A DNA stretch of 64,000 nucleotides from Diadema antillarum (Eukaryota), in the NCBI RefSeq assembly GCF_040938485.1, contig NW_027271666.1, positions 1,736,001-1,800,000 of the forward strand. Reading direction: 5' to 3'. The first letter of the stretch is position 1. Every line of letters starts with the position of its first letter. The position numbers were made by a program, and so were the translations under genes. Shown here in pieces: positions 39,201 to 51,000 of this stretch. Under the pieces are notes generated by a model. That model was not told the origin of the DNA, did no database searches, and worked only from the letters and a program-made list of their open reading frames with translations.

Positions 39201-42200
39201 TTCATCATGGGTTAAGTAGACATACACCAACTAAATGAATCCAAAAAGAAAAATAAAGGACAAACATGTTGTAATTCTTGAATCATTTAATTTCAGTAAC
39301 TTGCGTTACACAAAAAGGACATGGTCAATTCTATGAAGACCTCTTTTTGGAAAGTCTCCTCATACTAGACAATCTTGATAAAAGTTTTCCTACCTTGAAT
39401 TGATAGTGGGTGAGGACTCATAAATTAACAATATCAAAGTTGAGTAACAATGACCTGGAAAAACGTAGGGAGCCTTTATGTCGGTAACTCGCGTTACGGT
39501 AACTCGCGTTACATTATGTCCACTAACACAGGGTGACACAAATTGATGACATACAATTGTTCTGATGGCACTGAATCTTGTGTTGAATAATCTGAGAGAT
39601 GCTTATTTGTGTAGATAGTAAAACGAATAAATGTTAAACAAATATTTTACTAATAAACCCAATAGAAGAGTGTGTTTAAGACTAATAAGAGCTTCACTCC
39701 TCATAGAGACCTTGAATATGTTTGAATATATACTAGATGATATAGGTGTATTATTACATTGTAAGTTTCAGAGTGTGAAGATGAAAAATGTTGAAAGTCT
39801 TTAAAAAAAAACATAAAAGTATCAAACCCTTTGTATATACAAGTTTACGAAACAGCTTACAATCTTTCAAAAATTCAATATCTTTGTGAGGAGTGAAAAC
39901 TAGTACATTTCTTTGCAACTGATTGACAAAAAGACCAGTTCGTAATTCCACTTTGTGCATGAACAAAAAAAGATCATTTGTACGAACAGGCATTTTGGTT
40001 TGTAAATTCACTGACATAAGCATCTGTGATGCGATGATTATTCATGCGATCCGTATCTAAATGATGCTTGCCAGCACATCCACCTGACAGCAAGAATGGT
40101 ATTTTGCAATATAAACGGAAATAAGCTGTTACTGCATTCAATACAAAACAATGAAATGGATGCCTGCTAAATTATAAACTGATTGGAGTATTCTGATCCC
40201 CTGATCTAAATGCAAGTTCATTCTTTTTTTTGAACAGAAGTTCCATAAATTGTTATGTCATGCAAGCTTATGCATTATGCTGCTTTGAAAACAAGTGAAG
40301 TGCCGAACCAACTGAGGAAAATGTGTACATGAGCTACAGTGTATACGAACTGGCTTATTACCCTACATCGACGTAAATAAGCACTGAATTGATCAGTGTT
40401 TTAGTAGTAGCCATGATAAAAAAGTCATGGGCGTACATACTCAAGCAGTATTCAAACTTACGACCTCCTGATCACCGGACAGGTGTCATCTCCACTAGAC
40501 CACCGTGCTTTCGCCCGACAGCAAGTGCTGGTTCTAATCCTTATAACATGCAGTGGGTACTGCGTAATTATTCAAATTCATGAAATTCTTCCGTTGAGAT
40601 GTTTTCATTGCAACTGATTGACAAATTGCCCTACATCAATGTTAATAAGCTCACTGAATTGATCAGTGTTTTATCAGTAGCCATGATAAAAAATTATGGG
40701 CATACACCCTACTTGAGCAGGATTCGAACCCACAACCTCCTGATCTCCGGACAGGTGTCATCTTCAGTAGACCACCGAACAAGGATTAGAACTAACACTT
40801 GCTGTGCTTTATAGCATTCTGTAATAAAAATTCTGTAATACTGATGCAGGAAATTCAAAAGATAAATCTAATGGTCTCATTCACTGCTGGATACATGTAC
40901 AGTACCGGTATGCAGTGAAAGCCAGGCTAGACTCTTCAATGTGGCATGTGATCAGTGGCCTTGATGCTAATCACAGTTTATTAGGCTGCCCTCCTTTGTT
41001 TCAGTCCAGCACAGTGTGTATAGCACTGCATTTGATTGTTTACACCACAGTCTAGCTCAATTAAGTGCTAAAATTTGCTTATGTTGGGGGAAACTTGTGT
41101 TTATAGTTGGTAACTCGCGTTACATGCCGGTAACTCGCGTTACATGGTAACTCGCGTTACACTTTTCATTGACATTTTTTAATGTGATAACAGTGTTTAT
41201 TCAAGTCAACATCCTGTGTACAGTATCGGGGTGTGATGAATTTAGAAAATTATGATTCCCAACAAATTACCTCCACTGCTTCCTTCAGAATGAAAAATAT
41301 TTCTTGTTTCGGTAACTCGCGTTACATGGCTCAAGGGCTGAACTTTCATGTGGTGATTAGAATTTTTTGAAGGTGGCATAAAAATTTCCTCATGGGAGAC
41401 TGAAGTAGAACCAATTTGCTTCTTTAAAATAAATTAATTGAAGTGCTAGCAGAATTTTTCTATTAAAAAAAATTATATCAAGTTGCGCATGCATTTTAGC
41501 AATTTGGATGACTGAAAAATTGTCTTCGACATTTGTAGCTGTTTCTCGGGAAATATTTGACCGATTGATATAATTCTTTGAGTTTCTTTAACTTCAATAT
41601 ATGGGTAATACATAATGAGTAATTCTTTTGCAATATGATAAAGTTGAAATTTTAGTGCCATGTCCACATTCCCATGGAATTGCCCTTATAGGGAACAAAC
41701 CAGGATCACTGAATACCTTTTGACATTGAAGAAAAACCTGGTGCTGATGTGCTCTGTAAGAACAATGTCTTCCTCCTGGATTGTGGGACGCATGGACGGA
41801 CCTGTGCACTGTCAAGAAACAAAAACAAAACAAAAACAAAAAGAACATGATCACTCCATCATGGCAGAAGTACAATATCAACACAGAAGTCTTTCTTTAA
41901 GAGAACCTAGTACCGTAAGATTTTTTTGTTGTTGTTCTCCCATCTATTGAATGTGCAGCATTGGTATTATTGGATATTTGATTTACTGAAAAACATGATA
42001 TTTTTGCGGCATGAAATTTTTGTGAGTTGCCTCTAACATTCAGTGCATAAAGTGTAGACAAGAACTTTCGCATTCACTTTAATTCTGCGAATTTCACAAA
42101 ATGAACATGTATGCGAATATACCCCATTTTACAGTACACTAGCTCTGAACTTTCATGAAAACTGAGAGAGAGAGAGGGGGGGGGGGGGAGACACACATGG

Positions 42201-43365: not shown

Positions 43366-43510
43366 ATGGCCGCGCCCATGGAGGCACTCAAAACTAGCTT
43401 CCAGAGAAAGTCGAAACCCAAAACCATAGCTGTCAGAGGTACAAGACCTTCACTTCACAATGGCCAGCTTCTTGTGTCAACCGGCGTCCCATCACTGGAC
43501 CATCTATTAG
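43366..43510 (+). CDS. ELP4: ELP4 exon 1
   Basis: [48 protein letters not shown]. Confidence 0.95.
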
Positions 43511-45051
43511 GTAACATATGAGTGGAATAACGAAGCAAACTTGTTTCATGTGGAGCTGTAGTAGTAGAGACCAGTCTAACAAGTGACAGCACAGGCCACA
43601 GCGTCTGCCGCCGTGCCGTGCCTACTTCTAGATAGCACGGCCGCGGCCCGGCGGCGTTTTTTTTTAAAGACCTAATAAAATGGTTTAGCAGAGACTCCAA
43701 CTCTCCCGTTTTCGACGGGAGATCTCCCGCCGAAAGCCCATTTTTGCACAATCTCCCGTTCTCCCGTTTGAGATTTGATTCCTCCCGCCCTGACTCTGTG
43801 TCTCCCGGTGGAAAGGATTTCTTACTTATTTCTATCGTATGTTGAAAAAATAAGCCTTAGATAGCAACAGAGAACACCTAGAATCCTAGGAACTTCGCGC
43901 TTCGCACACATCAACTTGGAGTCTCCCGTTTGCTAGGGGTTTCGGGCGGGAGAATCTCCAGATTAGAAGGTGCTTGGGGTTGGAGTCTCTGGTTTAGGCA
44001 TTTTTTTCTCAATGATGTAATAATATTAAATGTTAAATTCTAAGTAATTCTATGGTTGTGCGGGGTTTTTTACTGTTCTGAATTTTGTTCTATATTTGTT
44101 AACATAATGGATGCAATTTCCTCGGTTTTGGAAAACTTGCTATACTTTCGCCGCATGCGGCGCACTATCACTTCTAAATTGTGATGACGTCTAAGAACGG
44201 AGTCGTTCACGACCAGTCTAGCCGTAGCCTCTAGCCAGCGAGCTGGCAAGGCTATGCTAGCGCAGCGCAGCGACAGCCGGCCGGCGGCTGCACTGGCTAG
44301 CGCTGGCGGGGGAGCGAGCTAGCGAGCGCATAGCAGGTGCTGCGCTGCACTATTGTCATTGGCTAAGCCTTTAGACAAAAGAATATTTAATGAACTGTAT
44401 CGGATTTAATACTGCCAATAATACAGATTACAACTGTGGTACGCTTGGATATCCATTATTTTCGGCAAACTCGTGAAATAGGCCCCACCACTGCGTGTCT
44501 GTACTAATAGTAATACTAGCGTTACGGCGACTCGCCTGTTTCAGCCCCACCGTGTGGCGTTCATCTCGGTAGGTAAGCACGGCGGTGGGGCTGCCTTCCA
44601 CAGTAAATACTCGTGAATGCGGCGAAAATGACTTCATAATATGGCCCTCGACTAATTTAACGGCCAATTTAACCATAAATACAACCCTACCTAACCCTAA
44701 ATCCTAGGAGGACCTACCCTTGCTTGCTATAAACGCACGGGTACGGTGCACGCGCACTGCGGTGGGGCCTATTTCACGATAGCCCCACCACCACTGCGTG
44801 TTTGTACTAATACTACGGCGACTCGCCTGCTTTATAGGCCTAGACCTACTCGTGAATCCAGCCCCACCGTGGCATTCATCGGTAGATAAGCACGGCGTTT
44901 GGGCTTCCTTCCACAGTATGATTTTTAGCATAAAACAAAAACTACTCGACCAAAATTGACGATAATTCTTGGTATCGTTTTTCTTAGAAAATGGTGCATC
45001 TAAATTACTGATAACAAATGTTGCAGAAACTGACTATGGGAAACTGGTTAG

Positions 45052-45086
<35 letters not shown>

Positions 45087-48000
45087 AGCCACGACCCACC
45101 CTGTAACAACATATCCCCCTAACCGTTAGGCGTTAGAGTGTAGCCTCTGTACTACTACCAAAGATTCTGCTATTACTACTTACTAGTCTACTAGACCTAG
45201 AGCCGTAGTGGTAATAGTACTACTACTAGCAGTGTTAGTAGTAGTACTAGTAGACTACTACTACCGGTACTAGTAGACTACTATAACTACTAGTAGACTG
45301 CTACTAGATCTACTACTAGACTAAGTACTACTGGTAGTTTATATTGTAAGCGCCGGCCGACGGGCCAGGCCACGGCCGGGACGCTCCCGCTTGCTTGCTG
45401 CGGCCGGAGTAGCCGCTCACTTTGTGAGCGAGCTGGGCCTGTTCTTCTACTTACTAGACAAACAGTTACAACTTACAATGTCAATCATGTAGAATACAGT
45501 ATATCCTTTCTAACGTTAAACTATATGGGGGCATACCAGACATACCACTCTGTATTTCCCAGGCGATCGTTTCCGTGAGGTCTATTCTCGGGCTTGGTGC
45601 CATGTTCATACGCTCTTGCACTGGCAGCGGGGGAGATGCAGCTGGTTCATATCGGTATTAAAGGTGCAGCCCCACGATAACGTTCTGGTTCATCGGTTGC
45701 CTCTCCCTCCCCATCTTCCCCTTCAACTTCATGTGCCTCCTCTTCTTCTCCGCTATCGTCAGAGCTGCAGTCTTCATCATCATCATCGATGTCGAAGTTA
45801 ACCCATATAGGGGAAGACATTATGCTCGAGGTACCAGGTATCTGTGCAAGCTAACTTAGTGATAATGTACGTGGTAATGCGTACATGTCGACAGTCAGTG
45901 GGTCGATGGGGAGCGCACATCCCGCGGGGCCCGGGCCTGGCCGGGCTAGCTATCGTGTACGCGCGTGTACCAAGCTACAGTAGTAATCTGAGTGCTTGTG
46001 CTGAGCGGCGTCTGCTAACTGAGCACAACTCCGTGCTTATACGTCATCAATCGGTTCAGGGGTGTTGGTCACGTGACTATCTTTTTCGCAAAAGCTGCAA
46101 CGGGGTCCTCCAAAAATGTGATATTTGGGGGAGTTTCTAGAAGCGATAAAAACCGGAACGACACTGACAACCTATTTACATTGATAATCATACATATATT
46201 TTACATTTCTTTTGCATATTAAAACATTTTGCAAGCATTTTATTAGGTCTTTAAGACGGCACAGATTGGGGCATGGCGCGTGTTAAACCTATGGGAAAAA
46301 CGTNNNNNNNNNNNNNNNNNNNNNNNNNNNNNNNNNNNNNNNNNNNNNNNNNNNNNNNNNNNNNNNNNNNNNNNNNNNNNNNNNNNNNNNNNNNNNNNNN
46401 NNNNNNNNNNNNNNNNNNNNNNNNNNNNNNNNNNNNNNNNNNNNAAATTTTTAGTTTCCCCAATCTGTGCCGTCTAAAAAAAACACGCGGCCTGGCGTAG
46501 CAGCAGCGAGCGGCAGCGCAGCGACACTTGTGTTCAGCGCGGCGACGACGTACCGTACACAGATCTAATAGCTGTACACTGACTTGTGAGTTGTATCATC
46601 AGCAGGGCCCTGTTTTAATGAAGAGTAATTGACTAGTCTATATAAAGTTGATTGCTATGATAAGTCTGTGGCAGGCTGTGTGTTAAGGAAATTTAAAATT
46701 GATTTTATCTTTTGATAAAACAGGGCCCAGGGAGGTGGAACCCACGTCGTCGATCTAAAAGATGGGTGGTCGACGAGGAATAGACTTACTAACTGAACTG
46801 TTATAACGTGTTCTAGGGCTTTCTATAGCTCAGTCGGTAGAGCACCGGTCTAGCAATCCGGAGGTCTCGGGTTCGAATCCCGATGGAATCCCATTTTCTT
46901 TGCTCACTTTTCCACTAATAATTTATATTCTTTCTGGTCAGTTTATTCTGTCTTTATTTGTTACAAACTCAAAAAGCTGCATCACTTCGGTGATCCCTCG
47001 CATTTATCCCCAAGTTGAATTATCCTTCGGGTTTATGCCAGGTTCAAGTGTGTGCGTGTGTGTCACACACAAACACACTGCTATAGCTTCTGACCACCCG
47101 AGCATTGAGAATTAAGGGTTTCTGGGACGAACACTGCACTAGGGCTTTCTATAGCTCAGTCGGTAGAGCACCGGTCTAGCAATCCGGAGGTCTCGGGTTC
47201 GAATCCTGATGGAATCCCATTTTCTTTGCTCACTTTTCCACTAATAATTTATATTCTTTCTGGTCAGTTTATTCTGTCTTTATTTGTTACAAACTCAAAA
47301 AGCTGCATCACTTCGGTGATCCCTCGCATTTATCCCCAAGTTGAATTATCCTTCGGGTTTATGCCAGGTTCAAGTGTGTGCGTGTGTGTCACACACAAAC
47401 ACACTGCTATAGCTTCTGACCACCCGAGCATTGAGAATTAAGGGTTTCTGGGACGAACACTGCACTAGGGCTTTCTATAGCTCAGTCGGTAGAGCACCGG
47501 TCTAGCAATCCGGAGGTCTCGGGTTCGAATCCCGATGGAATCCCATTTTCTTTGCTCACTTTTCCACTAATAATTTATATTCTTTCTGGTCAGTTTATTC
47601 TGTCTTTATTTGTTACAAACTCAAAAAGCTGCATCACTTCGGTGATCCCTCGCATTTATCCCCAAGTTGAATTATCCTTCGGGTTTATGCCAGGTTCAAG
47701 TGTGTGCGTGTGTGTCACACACAAACACACTGCTATAGCTTCTGACCACCCGAGCATTGAGAATTAAGGGTTTCTGGGACGAACACTGCACTAGGGCTTT
47801 CTATAGCTCAGTCGGTAGAGCACCGGTCTAGCAATCCGGAGGTCTCGGGTTCGAATCCCGATGGAATCCCATTTTCTTTGCTCACTTTTCCACTAATAAT
47901 TTATATTCTTTCTGGTCAGTTTATTCTGTCTTTATTTGTTACAAACTCAAAAAGCTGCATCACTTCGGTGATCCCTCGCATTTATCCCCAAGTTGAATTA

Positions 48001-51000
48001 TCCTTCGGGTTTATGCCAGGTTCAAGTGTGTGCGTGTGTGTCACACACAAACACACTGCTATAGCTTCTGACCACCCGAGCATTGAGAATTAAGGGTTTC
48101 TGGGACGAACACTGCACTAGGGCTTTCTATAGCTCAGTCGGTAGAGCACCGGTCTAGCAATCCGGAGGTCTCGGGTTCGAATCCCGATGGAATCCCATTT
48201 TCTTTGCTCACTTTTCCACTAATAATTTATATTCTTTCTGGTCAGTTTATTCTGTCTTTATTTGTTACAAACTCAAAAAGCTGCATCACTTCGGTGATCC
48301 CTCGCATTTATCCCCAAGTTGAATTATCCTTCGGGTTTATGCCAGGTTCAAGTGTGTGCGTGTGTGTCACACACAAACACACTGCTATAGCTTCTGACCA
48401 CCCGAGCATTGAGAATTAAGGGTTTCTGGGACGAACACTGCACTAGGGCTTTCTATAGCTCAGTCGGTAGAGCACCGGTCTAGCAATCCGGAGGTCTCGG
48501 GTTCGAATCCCGATGGAATCCCATTTTCTTTGCTCACTTTTCCACTAGAAATTAATAGAATTTAGAAAGGCAATGATTTGTTATGTCTTTTTTGTCCCCA
48601 AATTATTCCTCAAAATCATGAGAGAAATGTCAATTTTGAATTAGGCCTATGCTAACTTCAATCACTTTGTTTACATTCATTTAATATCCAGGTGGTGGAC
48701 TAGCAGTTGGTACTGTTCTCCTTGTGGGTAAGTGATGTCATGAAATAATAAATAAAATGTTCAATGTTCAATGTGCAATGTTCAGGTTCATTGTCAAGAA
48801 GAAGAAGGACTAAGGAGGAGGAGGGGAAACATATAAGACACAAGTTTGTTAAAACTTTCAAAGATAAATAAAATGTCATTAACAACGGAAGAAGTGCAAT
48901 GTCATAAAAGAAGGAGGAGGAGGAGCACATGAGATACGTGTACTTGATAAAACTTTGAAAAATTAGATGTCGAAAAACGGTAGACCAGCAGTGACTTTAC
49001 ATAAGAAAAACATCTAATGTAATGGCATTCTCTTTGGAGATCTGCAAATAGATGGTTGTCTGTATAGGCCTACTCCAATATGCAAAATGGCACATTGCAG
49101 ATTAATTTTTTAAGTAAAGATGACCTGTTGTCGTTATTGATTAGCTTTTCCATTGATATGGAATGTTCAATAGAGCATAAATTTTATTGCAGCATTAATT
49201 GATTTCAGACCTCCCAACTATTTTGAAGTTGCAGGAAAGAATCAGAATTTTAACCATTTTCAGCTCTTGTTTCAATAGGACTTTCCTATTTTTCTGGACA
49301 ATGTTTCTACACTTTTCAATTGGAACTGCTCTTTCTTTCCTACTCTTGATCCAAATCATCCCTATTTTTCAGTCAGAAAGATTGGGAGGTCTGTGATTAC
49401 CTGTATATTGCAACTAGTGACACAAAGAGGTAAATATGTATGTATTTTAATATAATAGTATGTTAATGATGAATGAATGAATGATATTATGAATGAAAAG
49501 GTATTTTTATTTGGCAACATCTCTTGCAGCCCTCAGGCTGAATTACAGATATTTTACATTAGTAAATGTGAGAACATAGGAATATGAAGAAAAATACAAG
49601 ATATTGAACAATAAATATCAGGGATACAATATTGCACATGGAGATGGAACCTCATAAGAATAGTCAAGTCATGTACCTCCACACATGTATCTATTCAAAA
49701 AAAGAAAAATCTTACAGATACTTGATTAAGAAAACATGCGAAAAACAAACAAATCAAATCAAACCAACGCCAGTACTGAAATCAGATGCATAACAATTTT
49801 GCTCACTGTACATGTATATAATGTACATAAAACCCACGAGAGTTGTAGGGCCTAGTGTGAAGTTGGAGAAAAGAGAGATAGAGAGAAAGAGAAAGGGAGG
49901 GAGTGGAGAGGGAGGGGGTGGAGAAAGGAAAACGTTTCATTGCGCGTTTCAGAACTGTTAATTGAGACCTAACACAAACTTCCGAATAAAATTCAGAATT
50001 GTATACATATCAATAATTATTACACTGAAAATAATACTATACACTTCGTTTACATTGATAATGATAATGTAAGGCAGTGAGCAAAAGATACAAATATGTA
50101 TATTTTTACCAAAGAGAGAGGGAGAGGCGTGGAAAGACATGGATAAAGAGAAAAATAGATAGAACGCTAAAATGTTTTCATTTCTTTGCTCTGTCCAATT
50201 CCAGAGGAAGACACATTTGGCAGCTATGCCAATTTACTGCTCCGCTATTTTCTGGCTGAAGGCATAATGAGTGGCCATGGACTGATGGTAGCTAGTGCAG
50301 AGGAGCAGCCAAAAAAGTTGCTGAAGGTAAAGTCATTTGCTTTGCATGCAGCAAATGGAAACTTCTGACATTTTCACCTTGCAAACGTATATTTCTATGT
50401 GTGTAAGTGTTGTTCACACACACCCTGAATTTAACGTTTTTGAAACTCTAGTTTAACAATGCAATTCAAAAAACATTAATTTGTGTTCAGGGACACACAC
50501 AACAAAAGTGTTAATTATTGCGATCCATGTCATGATCCAAATATTGACTTCACTTATTATTTTTTCAATTCTTTTTAAACATTGTAACAATTTTCCCTGA
50601 GCGATGTATGTGAGCAGTATGTGAAGAGAAACTTAAGTCTTTTTAATCCCACAGTACAATGTGCCACAATAGGTCCATACACATAGAAGCCAGGGGTCAC
50701 ATTCTTGTCACTGTTGATTTTTGTTGTTGTTGAAACATCTAAATAAACTTGACTTTGACATTGTGATGCAAAAAACGTTAATTCATGAATGGTGGATGCG
50801 GCTATAGTCTTTCACTTCATAAGCATGATGTTTACCATTCTATGTGATTTTTTATTTTCATCATTGAGGATTATAGTCGACACTTTCGAATCCCCAAATA
50901 GGTTTAATATTGATAGAGAATATAGGCCCTTATTAGTATTATATGAGCTTGGCATTGTAATGCAACAATAGGGGATAATTCTGGAGGATCTGCAAGTATT

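What the first reader, a model, noticed from the sequence alone, without database searches (positions are those of the whole stretch)
46813..48548. Array of six near-identical tRNA-like Pol III genes with a chimeric identity, inside the Elongator subunit gene
Seen: a 78-nt cloverleaf with an intact A box (TAGCTCAGTCGG), an intact B box (GGTTCGAATCC) and an immediate TTTT terminator, repeated every 326 bp with one variant base. The D arm equals that of tRNA-Lys(UUU), and the anticodon/variable region resembles tRNA-Thr(AGU) but reads AGC (Ala). The 7-bp acceptor stem has two terminal mismatches and no G3:U70. It can instead be extended as GGG...CCC. Inference: not a decoding tRNA but a very recently amplified unit able to make a discrete ~80-nt tRNA mimic, possibly a source of tRNA fragments, a decoy, or a Pol III/TFIIIC insulator block next to the IMMP1L-ELP4 promoter. 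Its location in ELP4, a tRNA-wobble-modification gene, may be coincidence. Copy number could be affected by assembly, since a gap lies 370 bp upstream.
Basis: partly seen in the sequence, partly recalled or inferred. Interest (0 to 1): 0.75.

Follow-up and report, generated by a model that had tools for sequence, protein, structure and literature searches.

The report
tRNA-derived satellite repeat in ELP4 intron
The six tRNA look-alikes are real, but they are a short, young local array of a tandem repeat present in thousands of copies in this sea urchin and its relatives, so the locus is an ordinary passenger in an ELP4 intron and not a special tRNA-mimic gene cluster.

Summary
Positions 46813-48547 are 5.3 head-to-tail copies of a 326-bp unit with one differing base. 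Each unit has a 73-nt tRNA-like cassette with an A box, a B box and a T4 run. ARAGORN calls it Ala-AGC. Rfam tRNA scores 55 bits, but only over model positions 3-68. It is not a decoding tRNA: 1:72 and 2:71 are mismatched, 3:70 is U:A rather than G:U, the discriminator is C73, and 31:39 is U·U.

The array sits in ELP4 intron 1, 144 nt upstream of exon 2. It is not locus-specific. In independent runs, summed contig depth on the unit is about 10^3-10^4 times that of the flank. Thousands of contigs are 85-100% alike, and head-to-tail junction contigs occur in three runs. Runs under at least four species labels hold the unit alone. A metagenome contig carries a homologous ~291-bp tandem unit whose cassette is 70/73 identical, against about 68% for the spacer, with the terminator kept.

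Best reading: a high-copy tRNA/SINE-derived satellite-like family whose monomer keeps a complete Pol III cassette. This array is a recent DNA-level amplification or insertion. Transcription and the exact local copy number could not be tested. The scan had already noted this stretch (s1-215309) and another tRNA-derived array elsewhere in this genome (s1-211321).

The parts
46813..48547 (+). Tandem array: 5.3 copies of a 326-bp unit, laid out A-B-A-B-A-B-A-B-A-B-A. A is a 105-nt tRNA-like module with trailer. B is a 221-nt spacer.
46819..46891 (+). tRNA-like cassette 1 (73 nt, positions 1-73; anticodon AGC; 5-bp acceptor stem). Its T4 run is at 46894-46897.
47145..47217 (+). tRNA-like cassette 2. 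It carries the only variant, 47207 C>T (C63>U at a CpG), which keeps a G51:U63 pair.
47471..47543 (+). tRNA-like cassette 3
47797..47869 (+). tRNA-like cassette 4
48123..48195 (+). tRNA-like cassette 5
48449..48521 (+). tRNA-like cassette 6. The array ends 26 nt later, at 48547.
46966..47047 (+). Conserved spacer core (repeated every 326 bp). It is 85% identical to the metagenome homologue and holds a 5-bp hairpin closed by a UUCG/CUCG tetraloop with one compensatory pair change.
47048..47082 (+). Palindromic (GT)n(CA)n microsatellite inside the spacer (repeated every 326 bp). It is absent from the homologue L001.
43366..43510 (+). ELP4 exon 1 ([15 protein letters not shown]...). The array lies in the intron that follows.
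48692..48727 (+). ELP4 exon 2 (encodes [12 protein letters not shown]), 144 nt downstream of the array
46305..46444 (.). Assembly gap (left unfilled), 368 bp upstream of the array. It lies between 22-nt inverted repeats at 46250-46271 and 46458-46479.

Best explanation
The block is a short, young, euchromatic array of a high-copy, tRNA-derived (SINE-head-like) tandem-repeat family of this sea urchin and its relatives. Each 326-bp monomer has two parts. The first is a self-contained Pol III-type cassette: a tRNA-like sequence with A and B boxes, followed at once by a T4 run. The second is a roughly 250-bp spacer with an approximately 80-nt conserved hairpin-forming core and a GT/CA microsatellite.

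The repeated unit extends far beyond the Pol III terminator, and the copies are identical, so the array most likely arose at the DNA level and not by retroposition of the small Pol III transcript. Candidate routes are rolling-circle or extrachromosomal concatemer integration, or unequal exchange, with CTA(G) microhomology at the borders. This step is inferred.

The cassette is not a chargeable tRNA. It most likely still binds TFIIIC/Pol III and yields an ~80-90-nt tRNA-like RNA. This is also inferred, from intact boxes, the terminator, and family-level conservation confined to structurally neutral positions. Its presence in ELP4 intron 1 is incidental.
For: The array and cassette are confirmed.

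High copy number:
- Summed contig depth on the unit is 16,000-43,000 against 3-7 on the adjoining flank in X2 (same species label, a different study from the best holder).
- It is 356,000-880,000 against about 15-31 in X3 (another species label).
- 2,671 and 5,860 contigs were laid, spanning from under 90% to over 99% likeness.

Tandem organisation beyond this locus:
- 'Goes back 326' joints appear in X3, X11 and X14.
- X14 holds a 356-nt contig (326 plus 30) that closes on itself at 100% identity.

Distribution:
- Many runs, including very small ones of 6-43 million letters, hold about 0.20-0.26 of the sampled words. That is the share expected for the unit alone. They fall under four organism labels plus echinoderm and marine metagenomes.

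Homologue L001:
- It has a period of about 291 bp and 1.1 copies, with the same cassette (ARAGORN Ala-AGC; Rfam 50.5 bits, again model positions 3-68 only) and a T5 run.
- The cassette is 70/73 identical, differing only at positions 1, 16 and 59, which are unpaired or variable. The spacer core is 85% identical and the rest 42-68%. Fisher p is about 1e-6.

Not a decoding tRNA:
- 1:72 is C·C, 2:71 is U·U, 3:70 is U:A, the discriminator is C73, and 31:39 is U·U.

Other points:
- The right flank is single-copy right up to the border.
- There is no other copy in the 64-kb window.
- The D. setosum genome paper lists 5,384 tRNA genes, consistent with abundant tRNA-like cassettes in the genus (PMC11066563).
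Against: Depth summed over contigs is not a calibrated copy number, as the tool itself warns. No raw or long reads were available, so six units at this locus, and the proportion of tandem to dispersed copies genome-wide, are unverified. No RNA evidence exists: the only 'RNA' run that holds the unit is labelled a guess and may be DNA. The cross-species constraint rests on one outside sequence of unknown organism. The tRNA-like part has about twice the depth of the spacer, so the cassette also occurs outside this unit. Earlier first-reader notes, unchecked, mention similar cassettes inside TIR, fold-back and Helentron elements, so a transposon vehicle is not excluded.
Confidence: 0.75

Rival explanations
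1. A cluster of working tRNA-Ala(AGC) genes, a tandem tRNA gene array of the kind seen in Xenopus or zebrafish.
For: ARAGORN calls Ala-AGC. Rfam tRNA scores 55 bits. The A and B boxes and terminator are intact. The cloverleaf lies within 1.6 kcal/mol of the MFE.
Against: The acceptor stem has only 5 pairs (1:72 C·C, 2:71 U·U). Position 3:70 is U:A, not the G3:U70 needed by AlaRS (established knowledge). The discriminator is C73 and 31:39 is U·U. Rfam aligns only model positions 3-68, in both species.
Confidence: 0.02
2. A classical tRNA-derived SINE, retroposed by a LINE, that was then duplicated locally. Alternatively, a multimeric read-through RNA that was retroposed with 5' truncation, which would explain why the array starts with a partial unit.
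For: It has a tRNA-like head plus a conserved core domain and is high-copy. In the B-then-A reading, the array begins with a truncated unit and ends at a unit end. In L001 the unit abuts a LINE RT.
Against: A T4 run (T5 in L001) follows the head directly and is conserved, so Pol III would stop before the body. There is no poly(A) or simple-repeat tail at the array end. The only possible TSD is a 3-4-nt CTA(G) that also belongs to the unit. Head-to-tail junctions are common in other runs. The LINE in L001 is 5'-truncated and looks like an unrelated insertion.
Confidence: 0.1
3. Cargo of a DNA transposon (a non-autonomous Helitron/Helentron element or a MITE) whose internal tandem repeats expand, as in oyster Helentron-borne satellites.
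For: CTAG or CTAA stands at every A/B and flank junction, which recalls Helitron CTRR ends. Unchecked first-reader notes on this genome describe tRNA-like cassettes inside TIR, fold-back and Helentron elements. The cassette has about twice the depth of the spacer.
Against: The right flank is single-copy from the first base after the array. No terminal inverted repeats or Helitron hairpin-plus-CTRR geometry were found around the array. The left flank could not be assessed.
Confidence: 0.1
4. An assembly artefact: the copy number, or the array itself, at this locus was created by mis-assembly near the gap.
For: The gap lies 368 bp upstream and the units are perfectly identical. No listed contig bridges the array border.
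Against: The family and its head-to-tail junction are real in independent runs. The right flank is matched at 100% by an independent run. One X2 contig stops exactly at 48548 and then runs on unlike the array, which suggests a real border, possibly an array-less haplotype.
Confidence: 0.05

Closest known systems
SINE-derived satellites (sSats) of squamate reptiles (Vassetzky et al. 2023, PMC10702118)
   Same: Both are tandem repeats built from tRNA-type SINE sequence. Both form short to long loci with high homogeneity within a locus, and both are shared or variable among related species.
   Different: Here the monomer keeps a whole Pol III cassette with its own terminator and adds a non-SINE-like spacer. 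No parent dispersed SINE has been identified. The host is an echinoderm.
Tandem tRNA-gene arrays (Xenopus 3.18-kb tRNA repeat, zebrafish chromosome 4, Entamoeba tRNA arrays); from my own knowledge
   Same: Pol III tRNA-type genes are embedded in a tandemly repeated unit with a spacer rich in short repeats, at hundreds to thousands of copies.
   Different: Those arrays carry canonical, chargeable tRNAs. This cassette fails the acceptor-stem and identity tests.
Rodent 4.5SH RNA genes (a SINE-related Pol III gene inside a roughly 4-kb unit repeated hundreds of times); from my own knowledge
   Same: A SINE-like Pol III mini-gene is amplified as part of a much longer DNA unit and ends at its own T-run.
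   Different: 4.5SH is 7SL/B1-derived and its expression is proven. Nothing is known of expression here.
Hammerhead-bearing satellites and retrozymes (newt satellite 2 and related); from my own knowledge
   Same: Tandem units of about 300 bp carry a structured RNA module that could define unit-length RNAs.
   Different: No hammerhead or other ribozyme match was found at E up to 10. The module is tRNA-like.

Membership tests
Decoding tRNA-Ala | Cloverleaf recognised by tRNA detectors | tested here: met
   ARAGORN Ala-AGC six times. Rfam RF00005 scores 55.4 bits, above the gathering score of 29, but the match is local, over model positions 3-68.
Decoding tRNA-Ala | Seven-pair acceptor stem | tested here: not met
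   1:72 is C·C and 2:71 is U·U, leaving 5 pairs. L001 shows the same defect.
Decoding tRNA-Ala | G3:U70 identity pair and A73 discriminator | tested here: not met
   U3:A70 and C73, read from the sequence. The requirement itself is from established knowledge.
tRNA-derived SINE | tRNA-related head with A and B boxes | tested here: met
tRNA-derived SINE | Body readable by Pol III (no T4 or longer run between head and tail) | tested here: not met
   TTTT starts 3 nt after position 73, with more T-runs in the next 60 nt. L001 has T5 at the same place.
tRNA-derived SINE | A-rich or simple-repeat 3' tail and variable target-site duplications | tested here: not met
   There is no tail at 48547. Only CTA(G) is shared at the borders, and it is also part of the unit. 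This rests on a single locus.
Satellite-like tandem-repeat family | Head-to-tail units at this locus and elsewhere | tested here: met
   'Goes back 326' joints in X3, X11 and X14. Tandem junction in L001.
Satellite-like tandem-repeat family | High copy number | tested here: met
   Summed contig depth is about 10^3-10^4 times the flank in two runs, and thousands of contigs were laid. This is not a calibrated count.
Satellite-like tandem-repeat family | Long arrays or heterochromatic blocks | not testable with these tools
   There was no genome-wide access and no long reads.
Helitron/Helentron-borne repeat | Defined element ends (CTRR 3' end with a nearby hairpin; shared flanking arms) | tested here: inconclusive
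Hammerhead satellite / retrozyme | Hammerhead ribozyme motif in each unit | tested here: not met
   No ribozyme family matched at E up to 1 over 44000-51000, nor at E up to 10 over the spacer.

The most novel reading that the evidence does not exclude
The family is not junk. On this reading, thousands of tandem monomers are kept as working Pol III mini-genes for a non-decoding tRNA-like RNA, comparable to the 4.5SH gene arrays. Alternatively they serve as TFIIIC landing pads, or as the DNA stage of an RNA that is cut to unit length at the tRNA-like module. Three observations point this way but prove nothing: substitutions in the cassette are confined to structurally neutral positions, the terminator is conserved, and an isolated self-closing 356-nt contig was found in a run labelled RNA.
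Probability: 0.12. Interest if true: 0.7.

Novelty: new member of a known kind. Interest (0 to 1): 0.33.

Why it matters
For this locus, very little: it is an intronic passenger, and the link to ELP4's role in tRNA modification is coincidence. For the genome it has practical value. Thousands of such cassettes will be called as tRNA-Ala genes by tRNA finders and will inflate tRNA counts in Diadema annotations. One published Diadema genome lists 5,384 tRNA genes. The family also appears undescribed in the papers I could search, and it may account for part of the large 'unclassified' repeat fraction. If the cassettes are occupied by TFIIIC/Pol III, the family would be a convenient natural system for studying Pol III-bound satellites.

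Tried and rejected
- Functional tRNA: rejected on stem and identity features.
- Known RNA family in the spacer: none, only chance microRNA-like hits on the GT/CA palindrome.
- Other copies in the window: none.
- More family members from public collections. The exact 45-mer found nothing in metagenome contigs. A 24-mer gave one locus, L001. Three scans of viral contigs and two of prokaryote genomes found nothing.
- Using the mechanical 71-aa ORF of the spacer to pull repeat-bearing contigs through the protein index: no candidate.
- Association with a LINE: the RT ORF next to the unit in L001 lacks its endonuclease half and a start codon, so I read it as a 5'-truncated LINE inserted in or beside an array, not as part of the unit.
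- Literature: no paper found on this family, whether searched by topic or by sequence strings.
- Earlier notes by sequence: blank.
- Steps left out. The assembly gap was not filled. The ELP4 exons were searched one by one and not joined. I laid one unit plus the flank, not the whole array, because the reads tool turns away long repeats.
Full report
**1. The observation**

The sequence at 46813-48547 is a tandem array with a 326-bp period, 5.3 copies and 99% matches. The five full units are identical except for one base, 47207 C>T at a CpG. The sixth unit is only the first 105 nt.

ARAGORN finds six tRNA-Ala(AGC) genes at exactly 326-bp spacing and no other tRNA in the 64-kb window. Rfam's tRNA model scores 55.4 bits (52 for the variant copy), with E about 4e-10 and a gathering score of 29. 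The match covers only model positions 3-68, so the two outermost acceptor pairs are not matched.

Read directly, each cassette is 73 nt (46819-46891 for the first). It has:
- U8, A9 and a canonical D arm that holds the A box;
- a 4-pair anticodon stem plus a U31·U39 mismatch;
- anticodon AGC and a 5-nt variable loop;
- a T arm with a perfect B box;
- a 5-pair acceptor stem (3:70 to 7:66), with C1·C72 and U2·U71 mismatched and C73 as discriminator.

TTTT begins 3 nt after position 73. The cloverleaf costs -19.1 kcal/mol against an MFE of -20.7, so it is accessible but not the predicted optimum. The fold as a whole is not unusual (z = -1.0).

**2. Surroundings**

ELP4 exon 1 is at 43366-43510 (Pfam PAXNEB, 2e-8). 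Exon 2, which encodes [12 protein letters not shown], is at 48692-48727. The array therefore lies in intron 1, on the sense strand, and ends 144 nt before exon 2. An IMMP1L-like gene (Peptidase_S26) lies head-to-head upstream on the minus strand.

The intron is full of other repeats. The assembly gap at 46305-46444 sits between 22-nt inverted repeats and I did not try to fill it. Earlier notes of this scan call the genome Diadema antillarum. I did not verify the species, but runs labelled 'echinoderm metagenome' hold the unit.

**3. The unit is a very abundant family**

The run search listed two runs that hold most of the stretch. It also listed many runs that hold about 0.20-0.26 of the sampled words. 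That share is what the 326-bp unit alone contributes once its repeats are collapsed. These runs carry four organism labels plus echinoderm and marine metagenomes. Several are tiny, at 6-43 million letters of contigs, and only a high-copy sequence would assemble from so little data.

I laid one spacer, one cassette and the right flank (48222-50400), not the whole array, because the tool turns away long repeats. The results:
- In X2 (same organism label as the best holder, a different study), summed contig depth is 16,000-43,000 on the unit and 3-7 on the adjoining flank.
- In X3 (another organism label), it is 356,000-880,000 against about 15-31.
- 2,671 and 5,860 contigs were laid, ranging from under 90% to over 99% likeness.

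The tool warns that such sums are not copy numbers. I take them only as 'thousands-fold above single copy'.

Head-to-tail junctions ('goes back 326') occur in X3, X11 and X14. In X14 a 356-nt contig, which is 326 plus k-1, closes on itself at 100% identity. The cassette part has about twice the depth of the spacer in both large runs. The right flank is single-copy from the first base after the array and is matched at 100% in X2. One X2 contig of about 85-90% likeness stops exactly at 48548 and continues for at least 24 nt unlike the array. That hints at an array-less haplotype or paralogue, and no more than that.

**4. A homologue from elsewhere**

A 24-mer of the anticodon arm found one JGI metagenome contig, L001, of unknown organism. 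It carries a homologous unit with a period of about 291 bp (1.1 copies, positions 1-325). It has the same cassette: ARAGORN calls Ala-AGC, Rfam scores 50.5 bits, again over model positions 3-68, and a T5 run follows.

Right after the repeat comes an open frame with an RVT_1 domain (8e-30). It lacks an endonuclease half and a start codon, so I read it as a 5'-truncated LINE beside or inside the array.

Conservation between the two units is uneven:

| Segment | Identity to L001 |
|---|---|
| tRNA-like cassette | 70/73; differences only at positions 1, 16 and 59 (unpaired or variable in tRNAs) |
| Spacer core, 46966-47047 | 85% |
| Other spacer segments | 42-68% |
| GT/CA block | absent from L001 |

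Fisher p is about 1e-6. The core contains a 5-bp hairpin closed by a UUCG/CUCG tetraloop, with one A:U to G:C compensatory change. One pair in two sequences is only a hint. The defective acceptor end, the U·U mismatch, the AGC anticodon and the immediate terminator are thus features of the family, not decay at this locus.

**5. What it is**

The repeated unit runs about 250 bp beyond a conserved Pol III terminator, so the array cannot have been built by retroposing the cassette's own transcript. It was amplified as DNA.

The event could be integration of a rolling-circle or extrachromosomal concatemer, or rapid unequal exchange. The choice of mechanism is inference.

The family fits 'tRNA/SINE-derived satellite-like tandem repeat', a kind already described in squamates (PMC10702118). 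Tandem tRNA-gene arrays and the rodent 4.5SH gene arrays are analogues (from my own knowledge). It fails the tests for:
- a decoding tRNA, on the acceptor stem, G3:U70 and A73;
- a classical SINE, because of the terminator after the head, no tail and no clear TSD;
- a hammerhead satellite, because no ribozyme match was found.

A transposon vehicle (Helentron or MITE) cannot be excluded. Unchecked notes on this genome mention similar cassettes in such elements.

**6. How it likely works**

Shown:
- intact A and B boxes at normal spacing and an immediate T-run;
- conservation of exactly these features in a second species;
- substitutions confined to neutral positions.

Inferred:
- each monomer can recruit TFIIIC/Pol III and make an ~80-90-nt tRNA-like RNA that cannot be alanylated;
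- constraint on the cassette acts at the level of the family, through propagation or a host use;
- the copy in ELP4 has no role tied to ELP4.

Because the cassettes lie in sense within the intron, they could in principle be cut by RNase P/Z in the pre-mRNA or interfere with Pol II. This was not tested. No RNA evidence was obtainable. All runs were served as contigs, and the one 'RNA' run that holds the unit is flagged as a guess.

**7. Novelty and verdict**

I found no paper that describes this family. The D. setosum genome paper reports 5,384 tRNA genes and 26% unclassified repeats (PMC11066563). That is consistent with many such cassettes, but it was not shown to be this family.

The finding is a new member of a known kind. 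The locus is ordinary. The family is mildly interesting because a complete Pol III cassette is conserved in thousands of tandem copies.

Noticed in passing
window 49171-49462 (peak 49317-49389): A second high-copy repeat lies in the next ELP4 intron. Summed contig depth reaches about 3,900 in X2 and 33,000 in X3, against single digits nearby. Most contigs differ from the window copy at the same positions, so this is an older copy of an abundant dispersed element.
   Followed up: no
window 46250-46271 / 46458-46479, around the gap 46305-46444: The assembly gap sits in the middle of a 22-nt, 95% complementary inverted repeat. This is probably a fold-back or MITE-like element that broke the assembly.
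   Followed up: no
L001:321-1640: The metagenome contig with the homologous unit continues into a 440-codon open frame with a LINE-type reverse transcriptase (RVT_1, 8e-30). It is 5'-truncated and has no start codon.
   Followed up: partly
run X14, laid on window 48222-48547: In a size-fractionated library labelled RNA-Seq from an echinoderm sample, the unit forms an isolated self-closing 356-nt contig (326 plus 30) at depth 26, while the flanks have none. It could be tandem DNA carry-over or a unit-length or circular nucleic acid.
   Followed up: no
window 48548-48760, run X2 contig 14: A diverged contig (11 mismatches and 21 gap letters in 213 nt) aligns to the right flank. It stops exactly at the array border and continues unlike the array. 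It may be an array-less haplotype or a paralogue.
   Followed up: no
window 45055-45085 and 45207-45336: A (T)31 run and a degenerate 23-nt tandem/palindromic repeat rich in TAC/TAG lie in the same intron, upstream of the gap.
   Followed up: no
window 40720-40757 (minus strand): A weak 38-nt, 76% match to the D-arm/anticodon part of the cassette. ARAGORN finds no tRNA there. It may be the head of another tRNA-derived element.
   Followed up: no
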